Assembly: GCA_038087875.1 (NCBI GenBank)
Contig: CM075978.1
Span: 180,234,001-180,298,000 of the forward strand
DNA: 64,000 nucleotides
From: Malacoraja senta
Lineage: Eukaryota
Reading direction: 5' to 3'
Below the pieces are notes generated by a model. That model saw nothing but the letters and a program-made list of their open reading frames with translations, was not told where the DNA came from and ran no database searches. Below are positions 3,315-40,759 of this stretch, in pieces; position 1 is the first letter of the stretch; each line of letters begins with the position of its first letter. The position numbers were made by a program, and so were the translations under genes.

Positions 3315-6300
3315 ATGCCGGTGAAAGCAATGGTTCGGTACATGGGTCTTCTTGCTTTGGTTTGTCAAGGTATGCTTAGTTTCTGTACCGATTTCGCTAA
3401 TCAAATCATATTTGTCAATATTTTACACTAGTATGCCACAGCAAATTAAATTTACAACGTTTCTGCAATTGCCTTACCACTATTTTCTAATTGTTTTGTA
3501 TTTGTGTATCCATTGGCTCTTTTTCTTGGTGCTGTATGTGCAACTGTTTTCGTCATATTTACTTATTTCTGCCACTGACAAAAGCAACTTCGAGCAAAGT
3601 GGAACAATTCCCCGCAATCCTGAAAGTCTCCAGAGGCAGAAATGAGTCCATGTTCTGCAAATTTCCAATATTAAAAGAAACCGCTGACGTTTCTTGGTGG
3701 AGAGGGGGCGAGAAGACATTTATGGAACCGGACAACAGAAAGCAATTCAAAGTAGACAAGGGAAGCAGTACGTTTACTTTGCTGAATGTGAGTGTCGCAG
3801 ACTTGGGGATGTATTACTGTCGAGTGAAAGATCAACTGCAACTTATCGGCAATGGAACTGGCTCCCAGCTAATTGTGTTAAGTAAGTTTCTTTGTTACGG
3901 GATATGTTCATCTGTTGCAATGTAACTAAAGCTTGCTTGTGGAGAAAATATTAATCTTATCTAGTTCTATAATTTGAATGGTTACTTCCGAGGTGAAAAT
4001 CTGAAATAAAGGGAACATACTGAAAAATATTCCATCCGTCGGTCAATATACGTGCAGCGAGAGTTCTGTTATAGTTTTGTTTTATTTACTCCGGGTTATC
4101 TTACAAAGTCATAGTGACGTTACCCTGGTTATTGCTCTTGTAAATTGGCAGGTCAATTTATATTTTGACCTCCAGCTTTTCAAATACCCAACCAAATTCA
4201 CGTTGCTCCGAATTTCCAGAAAGTTGCTAATTTCCCACCCGACAAACTTTCCCATCAACTAAAATCGGAGGAGAAATGGATCTCACAGTTTTGAGGTGGA
4301 TAATTTGGTTTACACTTTCACACTCTCCAGGAAAGTTCATGGAATGAAAAAAGAAAAAGAAGAACTACAACTGAAATTCTCCGATATTATTTCTTATTTA
4401 AAATAGATCCATGGTTATATCATCGTATAGAATAGAGCTTTGCTTGGTAATAATTTATATGGCACAAGGGAGTAAAAGGTGATATCGCTTTATTAATTAA
4501 TAATGATCGTACAATAAGATGTTATTACATCAATGAAAGAAAGTAAAAATGCTTAAAAACAAACGACATTAAGGAGATTACGCAATGAATTGACAAAAAA
4601 ATGTACAATTAACTCTCCCGCTCGCTAAATATTACTGACAGTGGCTCCAGCACAAATGGAACCATGTTCATTAATGTCTTGTTAATAAAATATATGAAAT
4701 GAGAAACAGAGTTTGCTCGGTTCATCCTTGCGTGTTTTTCGAGTAAATCGATTGTTGTCGCCGTTCTGCCATTCAGTGCAGTCCATTTTCTGTAACTACC
4801 ATATGCACATAAGAAAGAGCAAATGTTCAGAAGAAATGCGTGATTTTGAATTCAACATAAAGCACTGTCACGGAATCTTACCAAGCAATACATGTGTCAC
4901 ATTCCTTCATAATAATCGCGCGTACCCCGCGAGGCAGCAGTACTAAAGTTCACTCCATTCATGCTTTGTTTCAATTGCACTACTTATCTTGAATTCCTCC
5001 GTAAAATAATTTATAACAAAATTATAAACTCAACAAACAACCACACGAATAACAGGAGGCAACAGCAACTACTCAGCGACAATTATGTTAATTGAAATAA
5101 AATATATTTTATAGTTTCACGCTTTTTATATTGTTCCAGCTCCCCCAACTCCATTGAAAATTGTTGCTATTGAAGGAAGTGCACCGCATTTGCCGCAACT
5201 CGTGTGCAAAACGGCTGCGTTTTATCCAGAGAAATTAGAAGTTATCTGGCAAAGAAACAACGTGGAAATTTTGACCGGTATTGAAACCGTGAGAAACAGA
5301 ACAGCGGATGGATTTTATGAGGCTTCCAGTTTTTTGCACGATACGCAGCCTGCTCCAGGCAAAACTGTTTACACCTGCCTGGTATCACACATATCTCTTA
5401 CAGTCCCTGCCAGTTTCAGCTACATTGTCGAGCAAGGTAAGCCGGGAGGCATTTAACGCATACTCCAGCCGCCGAGAAATACAATCTGAACAAGGGTCTC
5501 GATCCGAAATGTCTCCCATTCCTCTCTCCAGAGATGTTGCCTGTCCCGCTGAGTTACTCCAGCTCTTTTGTGTCTATTTTCTAATACAATTAGATAGTTG
5601 TGCAAATACAAACATCCAGATCCTTTTCATATTTACTGGAACCTGCGGTGGCGGGTCCAGGGTGTCAGATCCAGAATATAGAATGCATTCTGACTTTTTA
5701 AACTGTTGTCAAACTACCGGGCGTAGTTTTGTAAAATGAAAATGAACAGTCATCTTAACTTAACCTCTGCAAAGAGCCACCGTATAATGTGATCTGTTCT
5801 ATAAATTCGTCATTACCGTACAGTGCGTGCCATGTGGCAGTCATAAAATCTTTGTGCAGAAAATATTGAACGATTGCTCTGCCTTCTTGTCTCCCGGTCC
5901 CTGTGTGTGTATTTATGTTTCACTGTTCTAATTTTTCGCCATATCCAGAAACCCCAGAAACCACGGACAAAACTCTAATTCTCGGATGTGTCGTGGGCGG
6001 ACTGTCATTTGTAGTTCTGCTTATAATTTTGACAAGATTCGCATTAAAGGCACAACGAGGTAAGAACCTTGTATAATTTTCCATTTCATACACCCGATAG
6101 AAAAGCGGTTGGTGCATTCTGAGAAGTATTGAAACAAGAATCTAGCTATTAGTTGTAAGTTAAACTACAATTATTTCCCCTGCCCTTTCGAATTATTCAA
6201 TCATCCATCGATTGTGTGTTTTTCAAACATCTATATTATTAGCGTGTTGATTTGCTTTAACGTCAAAATTTGAAGTATGAGTTATTTGGTGTAGACCTTC

Positions 6301-8583
6301 GCTTCCTCGGGTTGTGCAGATCTAACGCGGATTGTATATATGAAGGTAATGCACAACACATTACATTGTGGCGATGGTACTCCGATACGTATACGGGATT
6401 GTCGCTGCCTTCAAGGGTCCATAGGCAGTAGATGTGATTATAATCTAATACTGAACTTACATTTTCCTGACATTCAAATGTTATTCGAGATTTCTTTTTT
6501 TTCATGTAGGTATTAATGCAAACTCCGTGGAAGCAAGTCATAGCGTGGAACCGGTAGGTGAAGCTATTCTTCTTGTTTCCAAGAGGAATGGACGAGTACA
6601 GAAATTATACGATCAGCAGAGAATATATCAGTTTCATTCCATATAATTTTAGAACATTGCAGCGCAGAAGGAAACCATTTTGCTTGTCACCTCTAATATT
6701 GGAAGGGGCGCAGCGAGTAAACCTGCAGTCTCATAGTTCTGTCCTGATCAGGTTCAATCCTAATCTCCAACGGTACTGTGGGTGATTTGCATCTTATTCT
6801 TGTGTGGTTTTCGGCCGGATGCTCTACTCCCCTTATACCCCAAAGTAATGCGGATTGCTCGGTTACTTCGCTACTATAAATTGCGACCTAAGAATGAAAG
6901 TACATGAAAGTGCATAAGGGCAGACGATAAACTCGTCCCACTACCAGGTGCTCAAATAGGCCAGGTTGCCTGCGAGATACGGTGGGCACTGGGATCGCTG
7001 CATGAAATATATAGGGATGCCGGAAACGGCGACAACGGAGACTGAATAAGATGGCGGGAAGTGAGAAATTGATCGCATTTGGAGGAGATATTCTTCAAAT
7101 GAATCGCAAGCTACAATATTAATAAACAAGTTGAACACGGGCACTTTGAATCCTCTCGGGAAAGACATTCTGAGAAATATAATTGAATGCAGTTCAAATG
7201 GTATCGTGCCCTTTTTTGCAATTATTCTGTATGTTTATGTTTCAGACTCACTCTTTAAAACTACATCAGACACTCTGCTAACTGTGTTGAATATCACTTT
7301 CTAATAGGCTCGGCAAGCGTCAAGTGGAGATGCCTCTGCCTACGCAACACTAAACTTGAGTGAGGGCAAAAAAATTACCAAATATCGACGAAAGGAAGAG
7401 CATGTTGTCTATGCCGAGGTAAGGGCAAAGTATTTGCACGAAAATAATTCCAAGTAAATACCAGATGAAAGGAAATTATTTCCGTTGATTATGAAGTAAC
7501 CTTGTACGACTGTGGAAAAGCCGAAATGGCGAATTTCCAATTGTGACGTTGAAACCAAATAGAGCCGAACAACACATTCAGCTGCACGACGTCATCCCAA
7601 TGCAAAATTACCTTTATCTCTGTTCCCGGGTTTAATGTAGAATGCTGTCCAAAATTAATGGGAAATTAAGAAACAGACAAGGTAAGGAACAGCCAACCGG
7701 CTTTTCCACCCAACGGGCATATCCAGCGCCACGAAATATGAGAAATTCAGACAATGACAGGAGGAACAGATTGAAATTTGAATTCAGGAAATCCACCTTA
7801 ATAAGGGACAGGTGGCAGGAGGGCACTGGACCTCAGAGAGGTTTATTATATTATTTATAGAGTACTATGTTTACTTATTCTGTTGTGCTGCTGCAAGTAA
7901 GAATTTCAGAGTTCTATCTGGGACATATGACAAGCACTGTTGACAGTGTTTCCCTATTATCTAACAAAGATCACACAGTGAGAGAGATATTATGGCTTCT
8001 CCTCGTATATCCAGCCACAAGGTAAAACAAATTCTGGCCTTATGTGCTGTCATTTTGAACGTTATTTATTACATCCTCGCGGGTTTCCCGAGGTGCTCCG
8101 AATGTTTCGCACATCCCGAATCACGTGAGGGGTTGTAGACTAATTAGACATTTAAAATGTCCCGTGTTTAGGCAAGTGGTATAATCTAGGAGTGAGCGAA
8201 GTGTTGATGGCAATGTGGAGAGAATAAAATTGAATATTTTTCATGAATATTTGTGTTACACTGTTCGCTAGACCAAGAAAGGCTCCGCGGAAGACTGGAT
8301 AAATCATATGCACATAAACTCTTATACCTTATCTGCAATCTGGAAATGATAATTGTTGGTTATATTCCAATCGTATTGAAAAATCGATTGCTTTCCTAAG
8401 TCACTGTACAATGGGTTAACAGGCAATATTGAATATATTTCACAGACCAAACGAGGCGGAGATGACAAACTGACTTACGCCTCCCTGCAGCTTTCCAACT
8501 CCAAGGAAACATCGCTATCTAAGCACAATGACAAATACTCAGTGTACGCGGGTGTAAAGGTTTCAAGGAAAGCGAGAAGTTGA
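3315..8583 (+). CDS. Gene A: SIRP-like IgSF inhibitory receptor (leader-VJ-C1-TM-4 Tyr tail), ~371 aa, 8 predicted exons
   Basis: Exons 3315-3369 (MPVKAMVRYMGLLALVCQG), 3585-3881 (V), 5140-5436 (C1), 5949-6059 (TM), 6510-6553, 7308-7429, 7970-8021, 8446-8583. All introns are GT-AG, phases are compatible, and the 1116 nt total is open to TGA at 8581. Tail motifs: SAYATL, VVYAEV, LTYASL, SVYAGV. The donor at 7430 (AA|GTATTT) is weak, so the exon 6-7 join is the least certain part. Confidence 0.8.
3585..3881 (+). CDS. Gene A IgV exon with J-like end
   Basis: ATSSKVEQFPAILKVSRGRNESMFC...SWW...TLLNVSVADLGMYYCRVKDQLQLIGNGTGSQLIVL. B-strand Cys, C-strand Trp, DxGxYYC, GxGT/S motif; 297 nt, phase 1-1, AAG acceptor, A|GTAAGT donor. 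Confidence 0.93.
5140..5436 (+). CDS. Gene A Ig C1-set exon
   Basis: PPTPLKIV...LVCKTAAFYPEKLEVIWQRN...DGFYEASSFL...YTCLVSHISL. C1 hallmarks (CxxxxFYP, W, YxCxVxH); 297 nt, phase 1-1, TTCCAG acceptor, G|GTAAGC donor. Confidence 0.92.
5949..6059 (+). CDS. Gene A transmembrane exon (uncharged core)
   Basis: ETPETTDKTLILGCVVGGLSFVVLLIILTRFALKAQR; 111 nt, phase 1-1, G|GTAAGA donor. Confidence 0.85.
7308..7429 (+). CDS. Gene A cytoplasmic exon with two tyrosine motifs
   Basis: ARQASSGDASAYATLNLSEGKKITKYRRKEEHVVYAEVRAK after a CTAATAG acceptor. Phase 0 is supplied by the 44-nt exon 6510-6553 (GINANSVEASHSVEP). Alternative donor at 7419. Confidence 0.75.
8446..8583 (+). CDS. Gene A terminal cytoplasmic exon with two ITIM-like motifs
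   Basis: TTTCACAG acceptor, then TKRGGDDKLTYASLQLSNSKETSLSKHNDKYSVYAGVKVSRKARS*. AATAAA motifs near 8787 and 8832. Confidence 0.85.
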   Translation, partial: TKRGGDDKLTYASLQLSNSKETSLSKHNDKYSVYAGVKVSRKARS

Positions 8584-9532
8584 GAAGCGAAAGACGCTTC
8601 CGTGGATTAAGAATTTATTTTTTCCACGGTCTGCACATCAAGGAGCAATGATCACAATAAAATGCACGCGCAAAGACAGTCCTTACTTTCACTTTGCATA
8701 GTGATTGGTTGTCGGAAATTGTTGTTGACCCTCTAAATGATCCGTGTTTTGATGCGGAAAGCGGAGCTAGCGGCTTAAAACCGATTAAAATAAATAAACA
8801 TGTGCTCTTGCTTATATATGTCGTTTTATTCAATAAAAAAAACTGCACATGGCAAGATATCATCAAAGCATCGCAATGTCCTCTAGTGATAACTTTTTTT
8901 CACGAAGGATGTCTCAAAGTTAATACCACGTTATGCAATTGTTTAAATATATTGTTGTTTAATCAAAACGGTTGTCAATCAGTCCTTGGCTTCACGAATG
9001 ATTCAAACGGCGCATTGTAACGTTGGTATTTCAAATTCGAAGTTCTGTAAGTGAGATCTTACGGTGAAAAGCTTTATTTTGCATGTTATCCAATGAGATT
9101 AGCTTGGAGACAGGCCGAATTCCCTCAGGCTCCTAAAAAGGCATGAGATCGATTCATGGCCTGAATAAATGGCCTAAAACCCATTCATTCCTTCTCTCCA
9201 GAGATGCCATCTGACCCGCTGACTTACTCCAGCATTTTATGTCTCCCTCCTAAAAAGGCCTAGGTGTGTCATCTTGACTGTCGCGTCAACATGGTTGGTT
9301 CAACATAGTTGGTTCACCACAGATCGTTGGTAATATAAACGCCGAGGAACTTGAAGCACATTTCACTTTGCACAATTGACGCTGTTTGGGCCATGTACTC
9401 CACCAAACTTCCTAAAGTCCATAAGTAGTTTCTTCCTCTTACTGACATTAGCGCGATTGCTTATCTATACGCCATGTTACTAAGTTCTGTATCTCCTTCG
9501 TGTGCTCCATTTCGTCATTGTTTTTTATTCAG

Positions 9533-9799
9533 CCCAGCACAGTGGAGCTATCTGCAAATGTATTACAGTCGGATTTGACCACACCGTTGTGAGTGCATGG
9601 GGGGACATACTAGGGGACTGGGAACATAGATCATGGGTGTTGAGAAATATTGTGAAGGAGACGTTGTCACAAATCCTCACTGAATGTGGTCAGTGTGTCA
9701 GAACGTTCAGTGATAGTAAACAAGAAAACGTAGGGCTGTACAGCGGGACCAGAACGCATCCTGGCTTTGAAATTCACGATGAGACTGAAAGGAGAGAAG
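9533..9799 (+). pseudogene. Possible degenerate Ig C1-like pseudo-exon
   Basis: Polypyrimidine-AG acceptor and AAG|GTAGAA donor. Across frameshifts it reads PSTVELSANV..PL.CE..G.Y...RSWVLRN...SVSERSVIV..GLYS(G)TRTHPGF. Confidence 0.3.
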
Positions 9800-10027
9800 G
9801 TAGAAGAGCACGGAACAGAAACGATTCGTTAGGCCCACTGTGCGTGTGTGCCTTTGATGCCAATTTAAACTAAATCAACCAGTCTGCACATTATATATAT
9901 TTCCCCATTGCCTGTTGTTCATGTGCATGTCTAAATGCTCTTTAAATGTTGCCATCGTATCTGCGTTTGCCTTCTCTCCCTCCAGCAAGATCCAGGCACC
10001 TACCACCCGCTGTGTAAAAAAAATGTA

Positions 10028-11618
10028 TAAGGAGGTTGCACGGCAGTCGAGGTCACGACCCGTGACCCGTACTGTTGCCACGCAACGCATTCTGGAGTAC
10101 ACGCGGTGAACGTCAGGTAGGCACTTACTATGGCTGCCAATACAGCGGGCCCATATTCTGTTCCAGTATCCGGACTCCACGCTGACTGGTTTCACACTCG
10201 CGGACCCCCCGGGCCGTCCATCCCCGCGGCCGGGTGTGGGGGGAGGAGGTCGTGGTGCAGGTGCCGGTGCAGTGTGGTCAGTGACTCTGGGTGGGTGGAG
10301 GGACCAGACTGTCCCCAGCTCCGCTGCAGCTGACGGGGACGTTGCCGGGTGTTGGGGAGGGGGAGGTGGGGTGCGGGTAGTCGGGGTGGGGGTTGGGGTG
10401 TGGACGCGGGGGGCTGGGGATGGTCGGGGGCTTGGGGGGCGTGGGGGATGGTCGGGGCGGTCGGGGCGGTCGGTGGGGGGGGTCGGTGGGATGGGGGTCG
10501 GGGTGCCGGTGGGGGGGGGGTCGGGGTGCCGGTGCCGGTGCAGCGCGGTCAGTGATTCTGGGTGGGCGGAAGGACCAGACTGTCCCCAGCTCCGCTGCAG
10601 CTGACGGGGACGTTGCCGGGTGTTGGGGAGGGGGGGTGGGGTGCGGGTAGTCGGGTGGGGGTTGGGGTGTGGACGCGGGGGGCTGGGGATGGTCGGGGGC
10701 TTGGGGGGCGTGGGAGATGGTCGGGGCGGTCGGTGGGGGGGGGTCGGTGGGATGGGGGTCGGGGTGCCGGTGGGGGGGGGGGGTCGGGGTGCCGGTGCCG
10801 GTGCAGCGCGGTCAGTGATTCTGGGTGGGCGGAAGGACCAGACTGTCCCCAACTCTGTTGCAGCTGACGGGGCCGTTGCCGGGTGGTCGGGGGTGGGGTG
10901 TGGGGGGTGGTCGGGGGGAGGGGGTTGTTGGTCGGGGTGCCGGGGGGGGGGGGTCGGGGTGCCGGTGCCGGTGCATCTCGGTCAGTGTCTCCGGGTGGAC
11001 GGAAGCACTAGACTGTCCCCAACTCTGCTGCAGCTGACGGGGACGTTGCCGGGTGGGCGGGGGTGATCGGGGGTGGTCGGGGGGTGTGGGCGGTGGTCGG
11101 GGGGTCGGTGGGGGGTGGTGGTGGTGGTCGGGGGTGGGTGGTCGGGGGTGGACGGAAGCACCAGACTGTCCCCAACTCTGCTGCAGCTGACGGGGAAGTT
11201 GCCGGGTATTTGCCCCCATGTGTCCGTGCACGGAGCCCCGGTCACGCTCCACCGGGCCTCGTGTGTGGGCGTTGCCGACCCACAACCCGGGAGGGTGGGC
11301 GGAGGGCGGCCGTGGCCGGATAGCGCTCACCCCAGGCGGAGAGTAGGCGCTGTCCCGAGGGATGCGCTCCTTCGGCCACTTACATCTTGGTGCTCGGATT
11401 CAGAGCAAAGATACTAGAGCATTTGGATCAGAGTGCTCAGTCACCCTCCACGATTATTTACAGCGCAAAAATGGACCATTTCGGCGGTTTTTAACAGGTA
11501 AGAAAGTATTCGTTTCGTGTGTTAACAGTGTATGCAGGAGGCTGCCATGTCCTCCAGAAGGGTTGAGGTGCTACGCGCGTCACGCCCTTTGATCCGATGA
11601 TCTTATGCAACCCCCCTA
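10028..11618. mobile_element. Putative non-autonomous DNA transposon with an internal GC-rich minisatellite
   Basis: Imperfect 13-bp TIR (TAAGGAGGTTGCA / TGCAACCCCCCTA, 11/13 match). TSD not identified. Confidence 0.45.
10267..11205. repeat. GC-rich tandem array: ~83-bp core x4 plus a partial copy, with G-run spacers
   Basis: Core GTGCAGCGCGGTCAGTG...CCAGACTGTCCCCA.CTC.GCTGCAGCTGACGGGGACGTTGCCGGG at ~10267, 10538, 10801, 10971 and partially at 11149. Confidence 0.9.
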
Positions 11619-11639
11619 TTGGCTTATCTCATTCTTACC

Positions 11640-13215: not shown

Positions 13216-15214
13216 ATATTTAAGGGGTCAAGGGAGTCATGGATCAATTGTCATAAGAATCAACAATGGAACGATTACATTATTACTTGCAGCTGTGTAA
13301 CAGACCTCAATGAAGACTTCAAGCACAATAAACATAGATAATATATAATTAGTAAAATCTCAATAAACGAATCACTCCAATGCCAGTACAAAAAGCCAGA
13401 AGTCCTTCGTGCAACCAAATATAGTCTGTAGTCCATAGCTGAGGTTAGTGTTGTGTAGTGTTCAAGAGCTTGATTGCAGTTGGGAAGGATCTATTCTTGA
13501 ACCAGGCAGTCACGGGTTACAGACTTCTATTCATTCCTCCTGATGGTCGGAATGAAATGAGAGCATGGCAGGGTACTATGGGTCTTTTGGAATGATGGTT
13601 ACCTCTTTGAGGCAATACCTCCTATAGATCCCTTTGAATTGAGCAGGCCAGTATCTATGATTCACCAGGCAATGTCCACCACTCTTTGTGATCTCCTTAC
13701 TTCCTGAGCATTAGAGTTGTCGAACCAGGCTATTATTCAACAAGTAATACTCTACGAGATACATGCGTAGACGTTCAGGAGAGTATTCATACACATATTG
13801 AATTTTCGCAATCTTCTGAGGACGTAGAGGTACCCAACCTTTTTCGTCCCGTTTACCACTGGCAACTTTAATAGCACATAACAATGTTATTTCACGGCAG
13901 CCACATTACCTCTTCTTAATATGCCAATTCAACTCTTCATTTTCATGTCGCATTAGGTCATCTGTCCTAATATAAAATTATGATTATGAATACTCCAGTA
14001 AAATGTATTGTGATGTCTTCATATGCTAAAAGTACTGTGAAAAAAACAAATTGTTCTTATTCGTCACCAAGATCTGTCAAGAAAGGCGTTGGCCGACACT
14101 CCAAAAATATAGAAGCCATATTGACATTTTGAAGCCCAAGCCAAACTCTTGTTCATTGAGCATTGATAAATATATTGTAATTTTATTTTCAAATTGGTTG
14201 TGTTGTGCAGTCACAAGATAATGTACTGATGGCCGTATTGAATTGCATTCAGGGAGTAAATGAAACTGACAAGACGACTCACGTCTTTCTTCAGCATCCC
14301 AACTCCAATAAAACAGCAGTATCCACGCATAAAGGCAAAAGCGCACTTTACGCGAGTACAAATCCTTAAAGGAAAGCGAGAATTAATATTTGAAATAAAG
14401 TTTTTTGGTGCGAACCATTAGTAAGTGTAAGTCCAAAGTATTGTTTCGTTTCATTTATTGCATCCAGAGAAAACGCAGAGCTGTTACATATCAGGCCAAA
14501 TAAGAAATGCATTTCTGATCCCATTACAAATGAAAACACATTTTCTGGCTCATTTCACCACACGATCAGAAAAGATGCAGGTTTCGAATATGCATTGAAA
14601 GGAAGATTCACATTCACATTCAGTTTTCCAATCAAATTGAGCAATGTAATTTTATTGCTGGATTATCAGATCGTAGAGTTCTCACTTACCCGGTAACCCA
14701 TAAAAGGAACGCAAGCATTAAAATGCCATTTCAGTTAACGCCAACTACATAACAAGAGACCCGTGAAGCAGACAATTGTGAAATTCAGGGAATATTTCAC
14801 ATGTTTTGCACGACGTGCATATCTCTACAAACAAAGAACGGCACAGCACAGAACATGACATCTGGCCCAGGACTGTGTAAAACGTGCTTGCATTCAGAGG
14901 CATGTTATTTAGTATAAGATTTAGGTCATTATGTTGCTTCACTACTAGCCATTGGCTATGACACTCTTGAAATATTATGTTTGGTTCTGCTCACAACACT
15001 ATTGAAAGGTTTTGGTCGCGCTAGAAGAGTACAGAAGAGATTTGTTCGCGGTTTAAGATTGATGCAAAAAGCTGGTGTAACTCAGCGGGACATGCAGCAT
15101 CTCTGGAGAGAAGGAATGGGTGACGTTTCGGGTCGAGACCCTTCTTCAGACTTGTTGTGTTTATCTTCAGTTTAAACCAGCATCTGCATTTCCTTCCTAC
15201 ACATTTGTTCACGT

Positions 15215-15650: not shown

Positions 15651-15959
15651 CGTCTCCATTTTCCCTTCAGTGAGTGTGTTTGTCGCTCGAGCAAATGGAA
15701 AGTCTCAAACAGCAGAGAATAGAATTGCACTCGCGAGCCTGCTGATGATATCGTGGTAACAATCTGTGGTTAAAAGTTAAGTTGCGCTGCGCTCAGACAA
15801 TCTATTTGCAGAATGCTCGCCTTATCACGTTCGATGCTTAACTTGGCCATAAAAAATGTAATTTGAGCAATTTATTTGAAAGTCTGTTTCTTTGAGGCAA
15901 TTTTATGTCAAGTTGCTCTGCAAAGTCTGTGCTTCAATTTCACGACATGTCATAGAATC

Positions 15960-16810
15960 AGACAGCTTAGAAACAGGCCCATCTCAATGTCAGCAAGACA
16001 AAGGGGATACTGATCGACTTACGGAAGCGAAGCGGTACACATACCCCAGTTTGCATTGGCGGTGCCGAAGTAGAGATCATTAAAAACTTCAAATTCCTAG
16101 GAGTCAATATTACCAACGACTTCTCCTGGACCACGCATATTGAAGCAACGACCAAGAAAGCACACCCAACGACTCTAATTCCTTAGACGGCTAAGGAAGT
16201 TTGGCAGGTCCCCGACAACTCTCACCAACCTCTTCATATACACCGTAGAAGTATTTTATCAGGATGCATCACAGCTCGGTTTGGGAACAGCTCCATCCAA
16301 GACGTCAAGAAATTGCAGCGAATTGTGGACACAGCCCGGACCATAACACAAACAAGTCTCCCTTCTATAGACTCAATTTATAGCTCACGCTGCTTCGTCA
16401 AGGCCAGCAGCATAATCAAGGCCGAGTCGCACCCTGGCCACTCCCTCTTCTTCCCTCTCTCATCGGGCAAAATGTATAGAAGTGTGAAAAAGCACACCAC
16501 CAGATTCAGGACAGTTTCTTCCCAGCTGTTATCAGACAACGGAATCATCCTACCGCAACCTGAGAGCAGTGCTGAACTACTATCTACCTCTTTGATGACT
16601 ATCGGACTATCTTTGATCGGACTTTGCTGGCTAAAATTTACCTTGCACTAAACGCTATTCCCTTATCATGTATCGCTGTAAATGGATCGATTGTAATCAT
16701 GTATTGTCTTTCTGCTGACTGGTTATCGCGCACAAAAGCGTTTCACTGTACCTCGGTACACGTAAACATAAACTAAACTGGACTAAACTGAACTACACTG
16801 AACTGAACTT
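15960..16810 (+). mobile_element. Rex1/Babar-like LINE RT 3' end
   Basis: FKFLGVNIT...LRRLRKFG...LQRIVDTARTITQTSLPSIDSIY...HPGHSLFFPLSSGK; (TAAAC/TGAAC)n tail. Confidence 0.75.
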
Positions 16811-17009
16811 GCCAACACCGACCAACATTTCTCATCTACATTAATCCCACCAGCCTGCGTTTGGCCCATATCCCACTACACCTGTCCTATCAATGTACCT
16901 GTCTAAATGTTTCTTAAATGGTGCGATAGTAGCTGCATCGAATACCTCCTCCGGCAGCTCGATCCATGCACCCGCCACCCTTTGTGTGAAAAAATTACCA
17001 CGCGAGTTG

Positions 17010-17850
17010 TTCAGTTTAGTTTAGTGTATTATTGCCATTTGTACCGAGGTACAAAGAAACTATTTTATTTGTATGCGATCCAGTCAAGGAAAGGACGTTA
17101 CATGAATACAATCAAGCCATCCACAGAGCACAGATAAAGGATACGTACCTCATTTAGTACAAGATAAAGCTGATAAAGTCCGATTAAAAATAGTTCAAAG
17201 GTCTCCAATGAGGTAGACGAGAGGTTAGGACCAGGACCGTTCTCCAGCTGATGAGAGTACCGTTCAGTTGACCGATAACAGCTGGGAAGATTATCCCTGA
17301 ATCTGGGGATATGCCTTTTCAGGCATCTGTACCTCTTGCCTGGTGGAAGAGGGGAGAAGATGGAATGACGAGAGTGAGACTGCTCCTTGATTATGCTGGT
17401 GATCTTGCTAAGGTGATTTGAAGTGTGTGTGGAGTCAACGGGAGGGAGGTTGGTTTGCCTGATGGTTTGGTCTACATCCACAACTCTCTGCAATTCCTTG
17501 CGGCCATGGATGGAGCTGTTTTTAAAGCAGTAGGTGATGCATGCTAAAAAAATGCTTTCTAGAGCACATTTTTAGAGGTTGTTGAGGGTTGCTGGGGACC
17601 AACCGAACTTCATTGGCTTTCCAAGGAAGTAGAGGTATTGGTGCACTTTTTTCCCCATACCTTCCTTGTAGCTGGCCCGGGACAAATTGCATGTGATATT
17701 TATTCCTAGAAACTTGAAGCTTTCAACTTTCTCTACTTCGACGCCATCAACGTATAATGAGTGTGTGCACTGTTTTGCTTCCAGAAGTAAATCGCAATGC
17801 CCTTTGACTTGCTGACATTGGGGTGGAAGTTGTTGTCTTGGCATCAGGCG
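17010..17850 (-). mobile_element. Rex1/Babar-like LINE RT 3' end
   Basis: Minus-strand ORFs VEKVESFKFLGINIT and MQRVVDVDQTIRQTNLPPVDS. Confidence 0.72.
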
Positions 17851-18640
17851 ACAAGGTGCTTAGTCTTTTTTCTGTACTCCATAAAGTTTCACGAACTCCT
17901 TTCTGTACTCTGGAAAGAAAAAATAAGGGAAGCAATTTTCGCAATATCAAATAATATTCGTTTTTTAAATGTGTTAATCTGTCTCTGACAGTGTCGACTA
18001 TTGGACCATTTATACTTTCACTGACTAGTTGTTATAAAATCGATGTCAGGAAAACATTTTTGTTCAAACTGACCTTCCAATCGGATACATCATGGGGCCA
18101 CTGGGGGAAAAAGTCGACTATTTTCATCTGAAAGAGATTATGTTATGACCTTTGGCACTTCTCTGCAATATGTCAGGTAATACACTGAAACTGATACATC
18201 ATCTTCACATGCAAGAGAGCAAAACTTATAAAACACACGAAGAGCTGTCAGTTACTTGTCTACTTAATTTCATGTTCGTATTTGAATACGTTTGATAATA
18301 CGCTAAAGTCATTCAGATGATAAGGCAGTTCAAACTAAAAATACATCTGTAATTTGTTTCACTCTTGCTTGTGGCTTTCAAAGTTCGGACAGATTTAAAG
18401 GAATTGAGACTAGATATAGAGGAATAAATGAAAAGAGGTTACAACTGTAGTTAAAGACGAATCTCCAGGAATTTACAGATTTTTTTAATCTCAAGTCTCT
18501 CTCGGTCATTGACATGTTTCCGTTTTTTCATAATTGATTCCCTTTCTAACACTCCCAGCTTTTACTTTTTATCAATTCGTATCACCTTTTGTTTGTTCAA
18601 TTAATCATTGGTCTCGTGCCGATTCGTCCTTCTTTATAGT

Positions 18641-18906
18641 TTAGTTTAGAGATACATCGCCCACCGAGTCCGCACCGAACAACGATCCCCGCACATTCGC
18701 ATGTCCTACACACACTAGGGTCAATTTACATTCATACCAAGCCAATTCGCGTACAAACCTGTAGGTCTTTGGTGTGTGTGGGAGGAAACCGAAGATCTCG
18801 GAGAAAACCCACGCGGTCACGGAGAAAACAGACAGACAGCACCCATAGTCGGAATCGAGCCCGCGTCTCTGGCAGCAAGGAAGCAACTCTACCGCTGCGC
18901 CACCGT
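18641..18906 (-). mobile_element. tRNA-derived SINE (HE1-like)
   Basis: Minus strand has A box TGGCGCAGCGG, B box-like GGCTCGATTCC and a (CTAAA)n tail. Absent from the homologous upstream region of gene A (~2330). Confidence 0.7.
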
Positions 18907-19009
18907 ACTTCAGTAATTCACTGCAGGTTTTTAATGCATAATTGGCCCTTTACAACGCAATGCAGTGAGATAGAACATTTTGCCGTCAGAAATCTAAGGG
19001 AACATCGAA

Positions 19010-19315
19010 GGTACACAAAAATGCTGGCGAAACTTAGCGGGTGCAGCAGCATCTATGGAGCGAAGGAAATAGGCAACGTTTCGGGCCGAAACCCTTCTTC
19101 AGACTGATGGGGGGTGGGGAGAAGAAAGGAAAAAGGCGGAGGAGGAGCCCGAGGCCTGAGGGATGGGAGGAGACAGCAAGGGCTAACAGAATAGGGAGAA
19201 TTCAATGTTCATGCCCCCAGGATGCAGACTCCCCAAGCGGAATATGAGGTGCTGTTCCCCCAATTTCCGGTGTTGCTCGCTCTGGCCATGGAGGAGACGC
19301 AGGACAGAGAGACCC
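19010..19315 (-). mobile_element. Penelope-like fragment
   Basis: Terminal motif plus ...EQQHRKLGEQHLIFRLGSLHPGGMNIEF on the minus strand. Confidence 0.65.
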
Positions 19316-19478
19316 GCATCTAAGGGAACATATCTCCTCCAGCGTACTCACGGAAGCATAAATACTGTGTACTCGAAATGCATCATGCTCCCCTAGTCAT
19401 GTGATACACCGTGTCGGATACACATACTTCAGGCATCCTATAATATCCTATTTCTTACGCAAAGCACTCATTTGCAGT

Positions 19479-22400
19479 ATGTCGGTGCAAGCAATCGTTC
19501 GGTACATAGGTCTTCTTGCTTTGCTTTGTCAAGGTATGCTTAGTTTATGTCCGATTTTGCAGAGCAAATCTTATTTTATAATATTTTACACTAGTTTGCC
19601 ACAGCAAATTAAATTTACAACGTTTCTCCAATTCCTTTACCATTGTTTCCTAATTGTTTCGTATTTTTGTATCTGTTGGCTCTTTATCTTGATGCTGTAT
19701 GTGCAACTGCTTTCATCGTATTTACTTGTTTTCTGCCACCCGCAAAAGCAACTTCGAGCAAAGTGGAACAATTCCCCGCAATCTTGAAAGTCTCCAGAGG
19801 CAGAAATGAGTCCATGTTCTGCAAATTTCCAATATTAAAAGAAACCGCTGACGTTTCTTGGTGGAGAGGGGGCGAGAAGACATTTATGGAACCGGACAAC
19901 AGAAAGCAATTCAAAGTAGACAAGGGAAGCAGTACGTTTACTTTGCTGAATGTGAGTGTCGCAGACTTGGGGATGTATTACTGTCGAGTGAAAGATCAAC
20001 TGCAACTTATCGGCAATGGAACTGGATCCCAGCTAATTGTGTTAAGTAAGTTTATTTGTTACGGGATATGTTCATCTGTTGCAGTGTCTTTGTTCCGGGA
20101 GGCGGGATATTTTTTATCTGTTGCAGTGTAACTAAAGATTGCTGGTGGGGAAAATATAAATCTTAGATCACTAGATTATGAACTGCATTAACTAGTTCCT
20201 TCCATAATTTTAATAGTTACTTGCGAGGTGGGATTTCGAAAGTAAGGGAACATGCTGAAAATATTCCACCCGTCGGTCGATATCCGCGAATGATTCTGTT
20301 ATTGTTTCGTTTTACTACGAATTTTCTTACCAATTCACATTGACATGGCCCCGGAGATTGCTCCTGTAAATTTGCAGGTCAAATTATAAACCCAACGAAA
20401 TATATGTTACTCCGAATTTCCAGAAATCTCCGTAACTACCACATGCATCTAAGAAAGAGCAAACGCTCAGAGAAATGTCTGGTTTTGAATTTTTTTTTTA
20501 AAGCTCTACTACAGGACCTTACCACGCAGTGAACCTGTCGCATCCCTTCAGAATAGTCTCGCGATTCCCACGTGGTAACAGCACGAAAGTTTCACTTTTG
20601 TGATTTGCCTCAATTATATTTGTCATCTTTATATCCACCGTAAAATAATTTATAACAAAATTATACAGTAAACAAACGACCACGCGGATAACAAGAGGTA
20701 GTGGCAACTATTCAGCGACAAATGTTCATTGTAATTAAATAAATCTTGCAATTTCACACTCATGTTTATTGTTGCAGCTCCCCCAACTCCACTGAAAATT
20801 GTTCTTTTTGAAGGAAGTGCGCCGCATTTCCCGAAACTCGTGTGTAAAACGGCGGCGTTTTATCCGGAGAAATTAGAAGTCACCTGGCAAAGAAATAACA
20901 TTGAAATTTTGACTGGTATAGAAACCGTGAGAAACAGGACTGCGGAGGGATTTTATGAGGCTTCGAGTTTTTTGCAAGATGCGCTGTCTGCTCCAGGCAA
21001 AACTATTTACACCTGCCTGGTATCACACGAATCCCTTACAGTCCCTGCAGGTTTCAGCTACGTTGTCGAGCAAGGTAAGACAGGAGGCATTTAACACACA
21101 CTGCACGGGGAATACGGTTAGATAATTGTTGAAACACTAAGGGGGGAAATCTGAATTGTATTTATACGCAGTGAAAGATTGAGTTGCTAGCTACCTATAG
21201 TTATGTAAATATCGTTTGCTCTCTCACCACTGCAAAGATAATCTTTGGAAATATATACTGACTGTCATAACTAAAGCAGTCACAAAACATTTCACAAGAA
21301 TTAAGATGTAAGATAAATCGCTAAGCTGCTCAGGGAGATGTCAGGTCAGATCACCAGTTGTGAAAAAAAGAAGCAGCGGTGAATTTCGTGGGCGAAGCTT
21401 GGCGCATCATCGTGGTAGAACAGGGAAATTCAGCCGGAGAGTGTATGAAATAAATGAACTTTTACGTACATTTTGAACTTTGGGCTAAAGTACCGGGCGC
21501 TGTGTTGTAAAAATAAATAAAATCCTTTTATCTTAATAAGCAAACCTCTTCACAATCTGCCACCGTGTGTGTGATTTGTTCCTTCAATAAATTCCAATAT
21601 TACCTTACAATTCATGGACAATGGAGGACCAGGCGTGGGGAGACCGCCGTGGAGAGGGGGAAGGGAGGAGGACAAATGGGGACCTGGCGCGGGGGTAACT
21701 TTGTAACTTTGTAAGCGCCCTTGGGTATGCAAGCAAATAATTTCACTGTGACGTGTCACATGTGACGACGAAGTATTGAATCTGTATTGAATATTTTATG
21801 CAGGGAGGGTGGATAGATACCTTAAAATGCTCTGCTTTCTTGTCTCCCTATTCCTGAATATGTGTTCCTATGGTTCACAGTATCTTATGTTTCGCCAGAT
21901 CCAGAAACCACGAACAAAACACAAATTCTTGGATGTGTAGTGGGCGGACTGTTAATTGTGATTCTGATTATATTTTTCACAAGATTCGGATTAAAGACGC
22001 AACAGGGTAAGAACGTTGCATATTTTTACCAAGTACTGCAATTTATCAGTTCTGTTCATTGATCAGAGACAGGGTACATTCTATTGCAGCGCGAAACACG
22101 ATTTCAAAGTCATTTACTGCTTGAAAATTGATAATAGCGGTCTTTCTTTCAAGAGAGAGCTAGATAGGGCTCTTCAAGAGAGAGCTAGATAGGGCTCTTA
22201 AAGATAGCGGAGTTGGGGGATATGGGGAGAAGGCAGGAACGGGGTACTGATTGTGGATGATCAGCCGTGGTCACATTGAATGGCGGTGCTGGCTCGAAGG
22301 GCCGAATGGCCTACTCCTGCACCTATTGTCTATTGTCAGTCAAACACGGAATCTGAACAGAAAATTATTTCATCTGCCCCACACCACCCTGACATCACAT

Positions 22401-24257
22401 ATAACCCTTAAAGGTTCCTTCCAGTTTCAACTATTTGGTCAAACAAGGACATGCAGGAAGCATTTTAAACGAGTTCTACATCAGATTAGAAATACAGCTG
22501 TGTAGTTGTTCAAACACGAGAGAGAGAAGTATGAATTGTATTATTTGTAGTGAAAGGCCAACGTGCAAGCTACTCAAAAACTAATACCTCATTCAATGCA
22601 TCCCGACTGAGATGAATTAACAACTTGAATTTATGTGCGGCTTATTTCATTGTAAACAATCGTGAGTATATGGGACTACGCGGCCAGATTCAGCTCAATT
22701 TCCATCTACAAATTTGCAGATGACACCACGGGTGTGGGCCGGATCGCAAACAATGGCATGTGCGTGTGTCCTTAGTTCTCGAATTCACTCTTAACCCCCT
22801 CTTTGACATTACCCATTGCTAAAATACTTCCTTGCATCTTCACCGTATCTGCACGCACGTCCTATTATGTGGATCGATGACAAATTATACTGTGTATAAT
22901 GCTTCTGCTTTTTTTTAAACTGATGTCTATTGCCTAGTGTAACAATATGAAATAAATAAATCTCTTCTTAACCTAAATCAATTATCCCCTATAGAAAGAG
23001 CTACTCTGTAACGTGACGCGTTTGCTTGATATTTAAAATTTCTATGTTTCTATGTTTCTAACCCATAATTGTTGCAATATGTATTTCCTACAATATTTTT
23101 TGGTAGGTTGGAGCGTCACTTTTCAATGCTCTGCCATTAGCTTCTACTCCCTGTATAATTAATGTCTCACGGTTTCTTATTTTTCACCTAATCCAGAAAG
23201 TACTTATAAAAGACTGATTCTCACACGTGCAGTGGGTGGATTGGTAATTTTGCTTTCGATTATAATTTTGACCAGATTAGCATGGACGGCACAACATGGT
23301 AAGCACCTTGGATTGTTCCGTTATTTCAATCCTATTTCTAGAAAAGAGAAAATATGCGTTTTTATTCGGAATTAAACAGAACGTCCATAGCATTTATCTA
23401 TTTGACAGTTGGCTATACCAGTGTAAATTGCGCCTTAAAATGCAATGATTTCACCATTCCATTCGAAGTATTCACTCCTGTCCTGAACCAATCCTTTGTG
23501 AACACCTGAGTTTATTCACCGAAATGTGTCCCTCGTGACAAAACGAGAGGAAACTGAGCGTCCGAGAGCAAAGTAACCAATTTCAATCTGTCCAAAAGGC
23601 CATGCCGGCTAATTGCAACAATCTGTGATCCGACTGACAAATGGAGGTGTATCAGTAAATTCAGAATGGGAATTTACACCGTGGGCTTGACAGATGAAAC
23701 TGGTTGCCAGCGATCAAACACAAATACATCAAAACGGCTCTGTGCAATATTAATACCACACATGGATAGTATCGTATGTGTTTAAGAATTTAACTAATCT
23801 CTCAATCTGGCCTTCAATGTCGCCTGTTTGACGTTTGTTCCTTCTCCTTATGACCCCGTGGATTTATTCCGGGTGTTCCTGTTTTCTAGCACATCCCAAA
23901 GATATGTGGAATGGTGGGTTAATTATCCCCTGTAAAATGCTCATCTGTTAGAGGACTTCTAAAATTTGGGGGCGGGGGAGAGGTTAATGACAATATGAAG
24001 CGAATAAAGTAGAATTTGGGTTAATGGGAGTTTGACGGTCGGCGCAGACTTGGATCCGCGTAATTACGACATAGTTCTGTGGACCATGATCGGCTCATGT
24101 GAAAATCGAGAAAAATATTGATATAAAATCCATATAACCTTTCTGCAAACTAAAATTGTTGAGTACCTTAGAATGTTATTGGAAAGAAAAACTATTGCTT
24201 TCCCGAGTCACTGAACGATGGACTAATGGCCGATATGAAATTACTTTCACAGACTAA
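19479..24257 (+). CDS. Gene B: paralogous leader-VJ-C1-TM receptor, predicted short-tailed activating type (~251 aa with TM2)
   Basis: Exons 19479-19533 (MSVQAIVRYIGLLALLCQG), 19749-20045 (V), 20778-21074 (C1), TM1 21899-22006 and/or TM2 23197-23298, terminal exon from 24253 (G+AC TAA). All open and GT-AG. The terminal exon choice is inferred. Confidence 0.72.
19749..20045 (+). CDS. Gene B IgV exon (protein-identical to gene A)
   Basis: Same translation as 3585-3881; only CTG>TTG and GGC>GGA differ. Confidence 0.93.
20778..21074 (+). CDS. Gene B Ig C1-set exon
   Basis: PPTPLKIVLFEGSAPHFPKLVCKTAAFYPEKLEVTWQRN...YTCLVSHESL; 297 nt, phase 1-1. Confidence 0.92.
21899..22006 (+). CDS. Gene B TM exon 1 (neutral, gene A-like)
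   Basis: DPETTNKTQILGCVVGGLLIVILIIFFTRFGLKTQQ; CGCCAG acceptor, G|GTAAGA donor, 108 nt. Confidence 0.78.
22140..22338 (+). mobile_element. CR1-type LINE 3' end between the two TM exons
   Basis: GAAGGGCCGAATGGCCTACTCCTGCACCTATTGTCTATTGTC tail; internal duplication of TCTTCAAGAGAGAGCTAGATAGGGC. Confidence 0.8.
23197..23298 (+). CDS. Gene B TM exon 2 (Arg-containing)
   Basis: ESTYKRLILTRAVGGLVILLSIIILTRLAWTAQH; ATCCAG acceptor, G|GTAAGC donor, 102 nt, phase 1-1. Not in the supplied ORF track. Confidence 0.75.
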
Positions 24258-24365
24258 AGGAGGGGGAGCCAACAAGCTGCTCCGCAGCTTCCCAACTACA
24301 ATAAAAAATCAGCAACTAAGCAAAACGGCAAACACGCAAAGGTTTCAAAGAAAGCGAGAAGTTGA
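24253..24365 (+). pseudogene. Decayed homologue of the gene A terminal ITIM exon
   Basis: Same TTTCACAG|AC(C/T)AAA start and AAAGGTTTCAA..AAAGCGAGAAGTTGA end as 8446-8583, but 25 nt shorter with both ITIM Tyr codons lost. Confidence 0.8.
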
Positions 24366-40715: not shown

Positions 40716-40759
40716 TTCAAACACATTGTATCGTATCGTATTACCTGAAATTTGAAAAT

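What the first reader, a model, noticed from the sequence alone, without database searches (positions are those of the whole stretch)
3315..24365. Inhibitory/activating paired Ig receptors with an identical ligand-binding domain
Seen in sequence: genes A and B are a tandem duplicate encoding the same V domain. A has an uncharged TM and four cytoplasmic Tyr motifs. B has an Arg-bearing TM exon, and its ITIM exon is destroyed. Established: this is the paired-receptor logic of SIRPalpha/SIRPbeta1, Siglec-5/14 and Siglec-11/16, where a charged TM residue recruits an ITAM adaptor; TM Arg is used by NKp30 and NKp46 with FcRgamma/CD3zeta. Inference: this is a cartilaginous-fish paired-receptor system, possibly a decoy countering pathogens that exploit receptor A. 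I cannot tell whether it has been described.
Basis: partly seen in the sequence, partly recalled or inferred. Interest (0 to 1): 0.9.

Follow-up and report, generated by a model that had tools for sequence, protein, structure and literature searches.

The report
Skate SIRP-like paired receptor genes
A skate genome carries a tandem pair of immune-receptor genes with the same outer binding domain: one has an inhibitory tail, the other has lost it and carries a spare membrane exon with an arginine, much like mammalian paired receptors, but whether the second gene really activates cells cannot be told from DNA.

Summary

- **Gene A** (3315-8583) is an intact 7-exon, 350-aa gene: leader, V, C1, uncharged TM, tail. 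The tail has SAYATL, VVYAET, LTYASL and SVYAGV.
- **Gene B** (19479-24365) has a V exon identical in protein and 295/297 in DNA. Flanks are about 84% identical and the C1 exon 89%. Synonymous divergence is 0.03 in V against 0.25 in C1 and TM1, so gene conversion is confined to the V exon.
- **B's tail is gone.** It has no copy of A's first two tail exons. Two deletions (10 and 15 nt) remove both Tyr codons of the last one. Spliced from either TM exon, that exon reads Asp-stop.
- **The reading needs qualifying.** B has two intact, equal-sized TM exons: TM1, uncharged, directly after C1, and TM2 (LILTRAVGG). TM2 lies behind a relic of a C1 exon end and is much older (dS 0.65). B is therefore a chimera, and which TM it uses is unknown.
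- **The closest relatives do not use Arg.** In manta rays and sawfish the short forms have uncharged TMs.
- **Family context.** Gene C in the same window has an Arg-containing TM and no ITIM exon. Arg-TM short forms occur across this unpublished, SIRP-like chondrichthyan family.
- **Prior finding.** The scan already reported a similar pair 190 kb upstream in this genome.

The parts
3315..3369 (+). Gene A exon 1: leader (MPVKAMVRYMGLLALVCQ), donor gtatgc, phase 1
3585..3881 (+). Gene A exon 2: short V/I-type Ig domain with J-like GNGTGSQLIVL; conversion tract about 3579-3889
5140..5436 (+). Gene A exon 3: C1-set Ig domain
   Evidence: Pfam PF07654 E=1.5e-9
5949..6059 (+). Gene A exon 4: connecting peptide plus uncharged TM (LILGCVVGGLSFVVLLIILT)
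6510..6553 (+). Gene A exon 5: small cytoplasmic exon (GINANSVEASHSVEP), phase 1 to 0
   Evidence: tblastn with Mobula tails
7308..7418 (+). Gene A exon 6: cytoplasmic, SAYATL (ITIM) and VVYAE|T
8446..8583 (+). Gene A exon 7: cytoplasmic, LTYASL and SVYAGV (ITIMs), ...KARS stop
14157..14382 (+). Orphan relic of a last-tail exon between A and B (first Tyr changed to His, in-frame stop)
19479..19533 (+). Gene B exon 1: leader (MSVQAIVRYIGLLALLCQ)
19749..20045 (+). Gene B exon 2: V domain, 98/98 aa and 295/297 nt identical to A
20778..21074 (+). Gene B exon 3: C1-set domain, 89% nt identity to A, dN/dS 0.33
21905..22006 (+). Gene B TM1 exon: uncharged TM (ILGCVVGGLLIVILIIFFT), 102 nt, phase 1-1, donor gtaaga
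22408..22496 (+). Relic of the 3' end of a C1 exon plus intron start (70% to A 5403-5483); marks the junction with an older gene fragment
23197..23298 (+). Gene B TM2 exon: Arg-bearing TM (LILTRAVGGLVILLSIIILT), 102 nt, phase 1-1, donor gtaagc; Cys (TGT) in A and TM1 is Arg (CGT) here
24253..24365 (+). Gene B relic of the last tail exon: acceptor kept, 10-nt and 15-nt deletions remove both Tyr codons; read from a phase-1 TM donor it gives Asp-stop
41528..41582 (+). Gene C leader exon (MSFGASVRYMILLATVWH)
41984..42289 (+). Gene C V exon (51% aa identity to A by tblastn; 94% nt over the shared 297 bp to D)
45022..45312 (+). Gene C C1-set exon
   Evidence: Pfam E=3e-13
48245..48349 (+). Gene C TM exon with Arg and Asn (VVHVLRNVGGTLIILLVLATL); no ITIM exon found downstream
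62487..62541 (+). Gene D leader exon (MTVKASFRYMTLLVTVWQ)
62748..63053 (+). Gene D V exon; the rest of the gene lies beyond the window

Best explanation
A and B are a paired-receptor locus inside a tandem cluster (A, B, C, D, all on the + strand) of V-C1 immune receptors. Automatic annotation calls this family SIRPalpha-like.

Gene A. It is the inhibitory member. On ligand binding, its ITIM tyrosines would be phosphorylated and recruit SHP-type phosphatases. This is inferred from the motifs.

Gene B. It presents exactly the same V domain, because the V exon was recently overwritten by gene conversion (shown). It cannot signal through ITIMs, because its tail exons are lost or destroyed (shown).

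How B is built. B is a chimera. A younger A-like block (leader, V, C1, TM1) is joined to the 3' remains of an older family gene (C1-end relic, TM2 with Arg, broken last exon that now supplies Asp-stop and a poly(A) site).

Most likely way of working (inferred). B is expressed with a single TM exon and a roughly 10-residue tail. When TM2 is chosen, its Arg in the outer third of the membrane pairs with the Asp of an ITAM adaptor of the FcRgamma/CD3zeta type and gives an activating signal. When TM1 is chosen, the product is a non-signalling partner.

My split: about 0.4 that a TM2 activating form exists and matters. Confidence that the locus is a functional inhibitory/non-inhibitory pair at all is higher, about 0.75.
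For: Pair and conversion:
- Identical V exon with sharp tract edges.
- dS is 0.033 in V against 0.249 in C1 and 0.276 in TM1. P = 2e-4.

Intactness of the genes:
- A is a complete 350-aa ORF with canonical splice sites.
- B's leader, V, C1, TM1 and TM2 are all open with ag/gt sites. The C1 exon has dN/dS 0.33.
- Both TM exons are 102 nt and phase 1-1, so either can be skipped in frame. Either one spliced to the relic acceptor gives ...QQD-stop or ...QHD-stop, 251 aa.
- A Narcine isoform that skips the TM exon shows such skipping occurs in the family.

Loss of the tail:
- Both ITIM Tyr codons are deleted.
- No other tail exon lies between B and C.

Family context:
- ITIM-tailed, Arg-TM short-tailed and neutral short-tailed members are interleaved across the ectodomain tree, in sharks, rays and a chimaera.
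- A Leucoraja Arg-TM protein and an Amblyraja ITIM protein share a 95% identical ectodomain.
- Gene C in this window is intact through an Arg-containing TM exon and has no ITIM exon.
- C and D have V exons under purifying selection (dN/dS 0.10).
Against: - No transcript evidence is available. Two protein-database searches found no product of this genome.
- TM1, not TM2, is the first TM exon after C1.
- TM2 is as diverged from A's TM as gene C's V is from A's V (dS 0.65). It is about as diverged as its short aligned flanks, and its dN/dS is 0.5, so selection on it is not demonstrated.
- Its Arg is one transition away from the Cys of A and TM1, and could be a neutral change in a dead exon.
- The closest short forms (Mobula 68-70% in V, Pristis) have uncharged TMs. 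The Mobula locus shows one TM exon only.
- If both TM exons are included, a 285-aa two-pass product results.
- A 2014 survey placed the first FcRgamma chain in bony fish (PMC4016189), so the adaptor in a skate is unidentified.
- TM2 and gene C's TM share no DNA similarity (36%). The shared Arg position is therefore not shared ancestry.
Confidence: 0.45

Rival explanations
1. B is a tail-less, non-signalling partner (SIRPgamma-like or decoy). It uses only the uncharged TM1 and ends after about 10 cytoplasmic residues, or reads through the TM1 donor. TM2 is an unused relic of a dead neighbour gene. B would then compete with A for the common ligand, or act in adhesion, without an ITAM adaptor.
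For: - TM1 is the first TM exon after C1. It is intact and lies in the younger A-like block.
- The closest relatives' short forms have uncharged TMs and tails of 3-15 residues: Mobula P0161 and P0162, Pristis P0163.
- The Mobula hypostoma short-form gene has a single neutral TM exon.
- TM2 shows no conservation above its flanks.
- A poly(A)-like hexamer lies at 22951, between TM1 and TM2.
Against: - TM2 keeps an open frame, a hydrophobic core, a good polypyrimidine tract and a gtaagc donor at 30% divergence.
- An exon with such sites 1.2 kb downstream would normally be spliced in.
- Its only charged substitution within the predicted 20-residue membrane span is an Arg in the outer third, where Arg sits in the family's short-tailed members and, from my own knowledge, in FcRgamma-coupled mammalian receptors.
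Confidence: 0.3
2. B is a chimeric pseudogene. It is a fusion of a partial A duplicate with a decayed neighbour, and is either not productively expressed or gives a useless two-TM product. The identical V exon is only a by-product of a recent conversion between neighbouring repeats.
For: - Chimeric structure with a C1-end relic inside the gene.
- Loss of two tail exons and a broken last exon.
- Another orphan tail-exon relic at 14157-14382 shows that gene decay is common here.
- Default inclusion of both TM exons gives a two-pass protein.
- Only about 110 bp of shared upstream sequence.
Against: - Five consecutive exons are open with canonical splice sites at 11-30% divergence.
- C1 dN/dS is 0.33. 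About 0.6 or more would be expected if one copy had drifted since the split.
- The conversion tract matches the V exon almost exactly (3579-3889 against 3585-3881). That fits selection keeping a converted binding domain.
- Truncated tails are how activating and decoy partners normally arise.
Confidence: 0.2
3. The identical V domains reflect extreme purifying selection since the duplication, not gene conversion.
For: The region of identity coincides with the exon. C and D show strong purifying selection in V (dN/dS 0.10).
Against: - Synonymous sites are also nearly identical: 2 differences where about 13 are expected.
- C and D have dS 0.22 in V despite strong constraint.
- About 8 bp of intron on either side of the exon are also identical.
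Confidence: 0.03

Closest known systems
SIRPalpha / SIRPbeta1 / SIRPgamma (mammalian signal-regulatory proteins)
   Same: - N-terminal V-type domain with a J-like GxGT motif, followed by a C1-set domain.
- The inhibitory member has four spaced tail tyrosines (...YATLNL... YAET... TYASLQL... VYAGV...) in the same order and kind as SIRPalpha's (my own knowledge of SIRPalpha).
- Linked partners have a charged TM and short tail (beta-like) or a neutral TM and short tail (gamma-like).
- A family profile hits the SIRPalpha ectodomain 2wng across V plus C1 (E = 2e-31) and SIRPgamma 4i2x.
- NCBI and UniProt name the family SIRPalpha-like or SIRPbeta1-like.
   Different: - One C1 domain, not two.
- The V domain is short (98 aa, I-set/V-set borderline).
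- The charged residue is Arg in the outer third of the TM. In SIRPbeta1 it is a central Lys that binds DAP12.
- Orthology, synteny and CD47 binding are untested.
- UrIg2 and Ig chains score as well or better in the same search.
Siglec-5/Siglec-14 and Siglec-11/Siglec-16 paired receptors
   Same: Neighbouring inhibitory and activating genes whose ligand-binding exon is homogenised by gene conversion while the TM and tail stay different. Here the tract is 3579-3889 with dS 0.03 against 0.25 outside it.
   Different: - Unrelated ectodomain (sialic-acid-binding V-set plus C2-set).
- The activating Siglec partners have a single charged TM and a proven DAP12 link.
- Here the partner has two alternative TM exons and no expression data.
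UrIg / UrIg2 (non-rearranging VJ-C1 genes of elasmobranchs; PMC12227049, PDB 9dmx)
   Same: Germline-joined VJ exon with split leader, followed by C1-set domains. UrIg2 is the second-ranked PDB hit of the family profile and the best one that spans V plus C1 (E = 3.8e-38). Gene conversion is reported within UrIg2.
   Different: UrIg and UrIg2 have several to eleven C domains, no ITIM tail and no paired activating form. They are expressed in liver and gill, and UrIg protein is found in extracellular matrix. The genes here are V-C1-TM-ITIM receptors.
Other lower-vertebrate paired Ig receptors (skate MDIR, teleost NITR/LITR/DICP, Xenopus CEACAM)
   Same: Multigene clusters mixing ITIM-tailed and charged-TM short-tailed members with similar ectodomains. 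PMC5112662 covers Xenopus CEACAM. The others are from my own knowledge.
   Different: Different domain types (no C1-set domain next to the V) and no sequence relationship shown here.

Membership tests
Paired activating/inhibitory receptor system (functional class) | Closely linked genes with near-identical ligand-binding domains | tested here: met
   A and B are 16 kb apart on the same strand. V is 98/98 aa and 295/297 nt identical.
Paired activating/inhibitory receptor system (functional class) | Inhibitory member with cytoplasmic ITIMs | tested here: met
   A has SAYATL, LTYASL and SVYAGV plus VVYAET, in an intact 350-aa ORF. Phosphatase binding was not tested.
Paired activating/inhibitory receptor system (functional class) | Partner lacks ITIMs and has a short tail | tested here: met
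   Two tail exons are absent. The last exon has lost both Tyr codons and reads Asp-stop from either TM donor.
Paired activating/inhibitory receptor system (functional class) | Partner's mature protein carries a basic residue in its TM | tested here: inconclusive
   An intact Arg TM exon (TM2) exists, but so does an intact neutral TM1 in front of it. Exon usage is unknown.
Paired activating/inhibitory receptor system (functional class) | Association with an ITAM adaptor through an Asp-Arg/Lys TM pair | not testable with these tools
   No adaptor gene lies in the window. The scan's notes hold none. PMC4016189 places FcRgamma's origin in bony fish.
SIRP family | N-terminal V-type Ig domain with J-like motif | tested here: met
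   I-set/V-set Pfam hits. GNGTGSQLIVL lies at the exon end.
SIRP family | Three-domain ectodomain, V-C1-C1 | tested here: not met
   There is one C1 exon between V and TM in A, B and C. A few relatives have two (P0065).
SIRP family | Tail with four tyrosines forming two ITIM pairs | tested here: met
   Four YA-type tyrosine motifs (SAYATL, VVYAET, LTYASL, SVYAGV) at tail positions 34, 57, 70 and 93; two other Tyr (TKYRRK, DKYSVY) also occur. Comparison with SIRPalpha rests on my own knowledge, not on an alignment run here.
SIRP family | Orthology (synteny, phylogeny with tetrapod SIRPs) and CD47 binding | not tested
   Only a PDB profile hit to 2wng and 4i2x and automatic names.
UrIg/UrIg2 | VJ exon followed by several C1-type domains; no ITIM tail | tested here: not met
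   A single C1 and an ITIM tail. UrIg description from PMC12227049.
Siglec-5/14-type homogenisation | Conversion tract limited to the ligand-binding exon, with older divergence outside | tested here: met
   dS is 0.033 in V against 0.25-0.28 in C1 and TM1. The tract spans 3579-3889.

The most novel reading that the evidence does not exclude
Gene B is a single gene that switches its signalling mode by mutually exclusive use of two tandem TM exons of equal size and phase. One is neutral and couples to no adaptor. The other carries Arg and couples to an ITAM adaptor. Both sit behind a binding domain that gene conversion keeps identical to that of the inhibitory neighbour. That would put a three-state system (inhibit, ignore, activate) on one ligand in a cartilaginous fish.
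Probability: 0.15. Interest if true: 0.75.

Novelty: new member of a known kind. Interest (0 to 1): 0.55.

Why it matters
Paired receptors with conversion-homogenised binding domains are best known from mammals (SIRP, Siglec, KIR, LILR). There they are read as the trace of an arms race with pathogens that exploit inhibitory receptors.

This locus shows the same genetic logic in a skate, in a V-C1 family that exists only as automatic annotation. The logic includes an ITIM-rich member, a tail-less partner, V-exon-only conversion and charged-TM relatives.

That places the mechanism in a cartilaginous fish as well. It also offers a concrete, small locus for asking how activating partners are made from inhibitory ones. 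Here the route was fusion with an older gene fragment and loss of tail exons.

The family's antigen-receptor-like V(J)-C1 build also bears on the discussion of non-rearranging relatives of Ig and TCR. The claim that B activates is not yet earned.

Tried and rejected
- **Expression evidence.** Two searches of the 5.8-billion-protein collection (Narcine homologue; B's own V-containing ORF) found no product of this genome. Splice usage could not be read from gene models.
- **Cross-species test of the dual TM exons.** The Mobula hypostoma short-form locus (L001) has one neutral TM exon, a small-exon remnant and an inhibitory neighbour tail-to-tail. It gives no support for TM2.
- **Shared ancestry of the Arg in TM2 and in gene C's TM.** Rejected. 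The two exons are 36% identical in DNA, which is no better than chance. TM2 derives from the neutral type (70% identity to A's TM).
- **Gene C's 3' end.** A weak protein match at 48512-48589 has no DNA similarity to any tail exon, so it is left undetermined.
- **An apparent broken leader for C and D at 41810-41930 and 62572-62692.** Rejected. The real leaders lie further upstream, at 41528-41582 and 62487-62541.
- **Fold search.** A predicted Narcine homologue ectodomain (pLDDT above 90 over V and C1) returns only antibody light chains. This confirms V-C1 but does not separate SIRP from Ig.
- **Literature.** Six full-text searches and checks of four papers found no description of this family. 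Subscription journals are not covered.
- **ITAM adaptors in this genome.** A words search of the scan's notes returned nothing.
Full report
**What is in the window**

The window is vertebrate DNA rich in LINE and SINE fragments.

A self-comparison shows four copies of one V exon on the + strand, at about 3.6, 19.8, 42.0 and 62.8 kb. The finding therefore concerns two genes (A and B) of a tandem cluster of at least four (A, B, C, D).

**Gene A**

I rebuilt A exon by exon:
- leader 3315-3369
- V 3585-3881
- C1 5140-5436
- TM 5949-6059
- a 44-nt cytoplasmic exon 6510-6553, found only through Mobula homologues
- 7308-7418
- 8446-8583

All junctions are AG/GT and the phases fit. The product is 350 aa.

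Pfam sees an I-set/V-set domain and a C1-set domain. The V exon ends in a J-like GNGTGSQLIVL. The TM is uncharged.

The tail has SAYATL, VVYAET, LTYASL and SVYAGV. Three are canonical ITIMs. The fourth (YAET, YAQT in relatives) is a conserved family motif, but not an ITIM by the usual consensus.

**Gene B and the V exon**

B has intact leader (19479-19533), V (19749-20045) and C1 (20778-21074) exons. The V exons differ at 2 of 297 bases, both synonymous.

Identity elsewhere is lower:
- intron 1: 86%
- start of intron 2: 82%
- C1 exon: 89%
- TM exon: 84%

There are 17 differences in the 100 bp before the exon and 2 between 3579 and 3889.

By Nei-Gojobori, dS is 0.033 in V, 0.249 in C1 and 0.276 in TM1. 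At the C1 rate, 13 synonymous differences are expected and 2 are seen (P = 2e-4). This is gene conversion limited to the ligand-binding exon, not constraint alone.

C and D show what constraint alone looks like: dS 0.217 and dN/dS 0.10.

**B's membrane and tail exons**

After C1, B has two TM exons. Both are 102 nt and phase 1-1, with good acceptors and gtaag donors.
- TM1 (21905-22006) is uncharged and A-like (83% identity in the core).
- TM2 (23197-23298) reads LILTRAVGGLVILLSIIILT. Its Arg codon CGT stands where A and TM1 have Cys TGT.

Between the two TM exons lies a relic of the last 55 bp of a C1 exon plus intron start (22408-22496, 70% identity to A).

TM2 is much older than TM1: dS is 0.65 to A's TM, the same as between the V exons of A and C. 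The following 900 bp align to A's last-exon region at only 60%.

B is thus a chimera. A younger A-like block is joined to the 3' remains of an older family gene.

That older part has no copy of A's exons 5 and 6. Its last exon keeps the acceptor, but a 10-nt and a 15-nt deletion remove exactly the two Tyr codons.

Because the TM donors are phase 1 and this acceptor was phase 0, splicing either TM to it gives Asp then TAA. The result is 251 aa with tails TRFGLKTQQD or TRLAWTAQHD. Inclusion of both TM exons gives a 285-aa two-pass product. No ITIM exon lies anywhere between B and C.

So B has certainly lost inhibitory signalling. Whether it has gained activating signalling depends on TM2 being used.

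**Is TM2 used?**

For:
- TM2 is open and hydrophobic, with the better polypyrimidine tract of the two.
- It sits in its original position before the exon that supplies the stop and a poly(A) signal (24300).
- Its only charged substitution within the predicted 20-residue membrane span is an Arg five residues into the helix.
- That is where Arg sits in the family's short-tailed members. From my own knowledge, it is also where Arg sits in FcRgamma/CD3zeta-coupled receptors such as NKp46, FcalphaRI, GPVI and LILRA2.
- TM-exon skipping occurs in the family: Narcine isoform X4.

Against:
- TM1 comes first.
- TM2 is no better conserved than its flanks and has dN/dS 0.5.
- One transition explains the Arg.
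- The nearest V domains in the protein collection (68-70%, Mobula short forms) and the Pristis short form have neutral TMs and tails of 3-15 residues.
- The Mobula hypostoma locus has a single neutral TM exon.
- No transcript or gene model of this genome could be found.

I put about 0.4 on a functional TM2 form, 0.3 on TM1 only and 0.2 on a dead chimera.

**The family**

A phmmer scan of 1.8 billion representatives with A's V exon found dozens of V-C1-TM proteins of 240-500 aa. Apart from giant multi-Ig proteins that match through many domains, these are the closest relatives.

All of the family members whose names I looked up (30 of them) come from cartilaginous fishes: Narcine, Mobula, Hypanus, Hemitrygon, Pristis, Leucoraja, Amblyraja, Heterodontus, Scyliorhinus, Chiloscyllium, Hemiscyllium, Carcharodon, Mustelus, Heptranchias and Callorhinchus.

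They carry only automatic names:
- SIRPalpha-like
- SIRPbeta1-like
- NCR3LG1-like
- tapasin-related-like
- lambda light-chain-like

They fall into three classes:
- ITIM-rich tails with a neutral TM
- short tails with an Arg early in the TM, often with Asp/Glu-His at its end
- short tails with a neutral TM

These classes are interleaved on an ectodomain tree. A Leucoraja Arg-TM protein and an Amblyraja ITIM protein share a 95% identical ectodomain. They come from different species, so this is not itself a within-genome pair.

In this window, gene C is intact from leader to a TM exon reading VVHVLRNVGGTLIILLVLATL, and no ITIM exon follows it. Gene D shares 94% of C's V exon. According to an untested note on the next window, D has an inhibitory tail.

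The cluster order is therefore: inhibitory A, ITIM-less B, Arg-TM C, then D.

**Relation to known families**

A profile of 28 family members hits, across V plus C1, UrIg2 (9dmx, 3.8e-38), SIRPalpha (2wng, 2e-31) and SIRPgamma (4i2x). Ig heavy chains also score, inflated by their several C domains.

A predicted structure of the Narcine homologue is confident over both Ig domains and matches antibody light chains.

The family works like SIRPs and has a SIRPalpha-like tail. However, it has one C1 domain instead of two, and its orthology to SIRPs is untested. It is not UrIg, which has many C domains and no ITIM tail.

The conversion pattern is that of Siglec-5/14 and Siglec-11/16.

**Novelty**

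I found no paper on this family. The library lacks most subscription journals.

The scan itself already reported a head-to-head activating/inhibitory V(J)-C1 pair 190 kb upstream in this genome and reached the same view of the literature.

The kind of system is well known. This is a new, undescribed member, with two features of its own: conversion confined to the V exon, and a chimeric partner carrying neutral and Arg TM exons in tandem.

Noticed in passing
window 10236-11207: GC-rich (64%) minisatellite between A and B. Units of about 263-271 bp and 170 bp, 2.6-2.8 copies, 82-91% matches. Long Pro/Gly-rich ORFs on both strands look like by-products of the repeat.
   Followed up: partly
window 14157-14382: Orphan relic of a last-tail exon, 5.6 kb after A's stop. 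The first ITIM Tyr is changed to His, the second is kept (SALYAS), and there is an in-frame stop. No other family exon lies nearby, so it is the trace of a further lost gene copy.
   Followed up: partly
window 24283-24350 (B relic): The two deletions in B's last exon (10 and 15 nt) each remove exactly one ITIM Tyr core. By a rough estimate this has about a 2% chance for random deletions. The last 37 nt around the stop codon are 89% identical to A, against about 60% for the 900-bp region around the exon.
   Followed up: partly
window 41528-48349: Gene C has intact leader, V, C1 and a TM exon with Arg and Asn in the helix. A LINE fragment (46343-47746) sits in the C1-TM intron. The 3' end was not identified. 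It is a cleaner candidate for an activating member than B.
   Followed up: partly
window 62487-63053: Gene D has an intact leader and V exon. Its V is 94% identical in DNA to C's (dS 0.22, dN/dS 0.10). The rest lies outside the window.
   Followed up: partly
window 5481-5580, 15055-15155, 38181-38276, 44014-44114, 60663-60762 and others: A roughly 100-bp SINE-like element is present in at least a dozen copies on both strands (73-86% identity), including in A's C1-TM intron and between C's leader and V exons.
   Followed up: no
window 25335-26441, 39524-40724 (-), 46343-47746, 50887-51684 (-), 55763-56218: Reverse-transcriptase-like ORFs of LINE fragments fill much of the space between the receptor genes. 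45897-47651 and 55340-57065 are 77% identical copies.
   Followed up: no
L001 (Mobula hypostoma OY992605.1:13240632-13277000): The short-form gene P0161 spans 16 kb. Its model leaves the TM exon at an internal site and joins a distant 15-residue exon. An inhibitory-type gene lies tail-to-tail 5-8 kb downstream, with ITIM exons on the minus strand at 33986-34982.
   Followed up: partly
Narcine bancroftii proteins P0005, P0159, P0166-P0168: Five predicted isoforms of the closest homologue. X4 skips the TM exon entirely, which predicts a secreted form that still carries the tail. X3 uses an internal acceptor in the TM exon.
   Followed up: no
   Followed up: no
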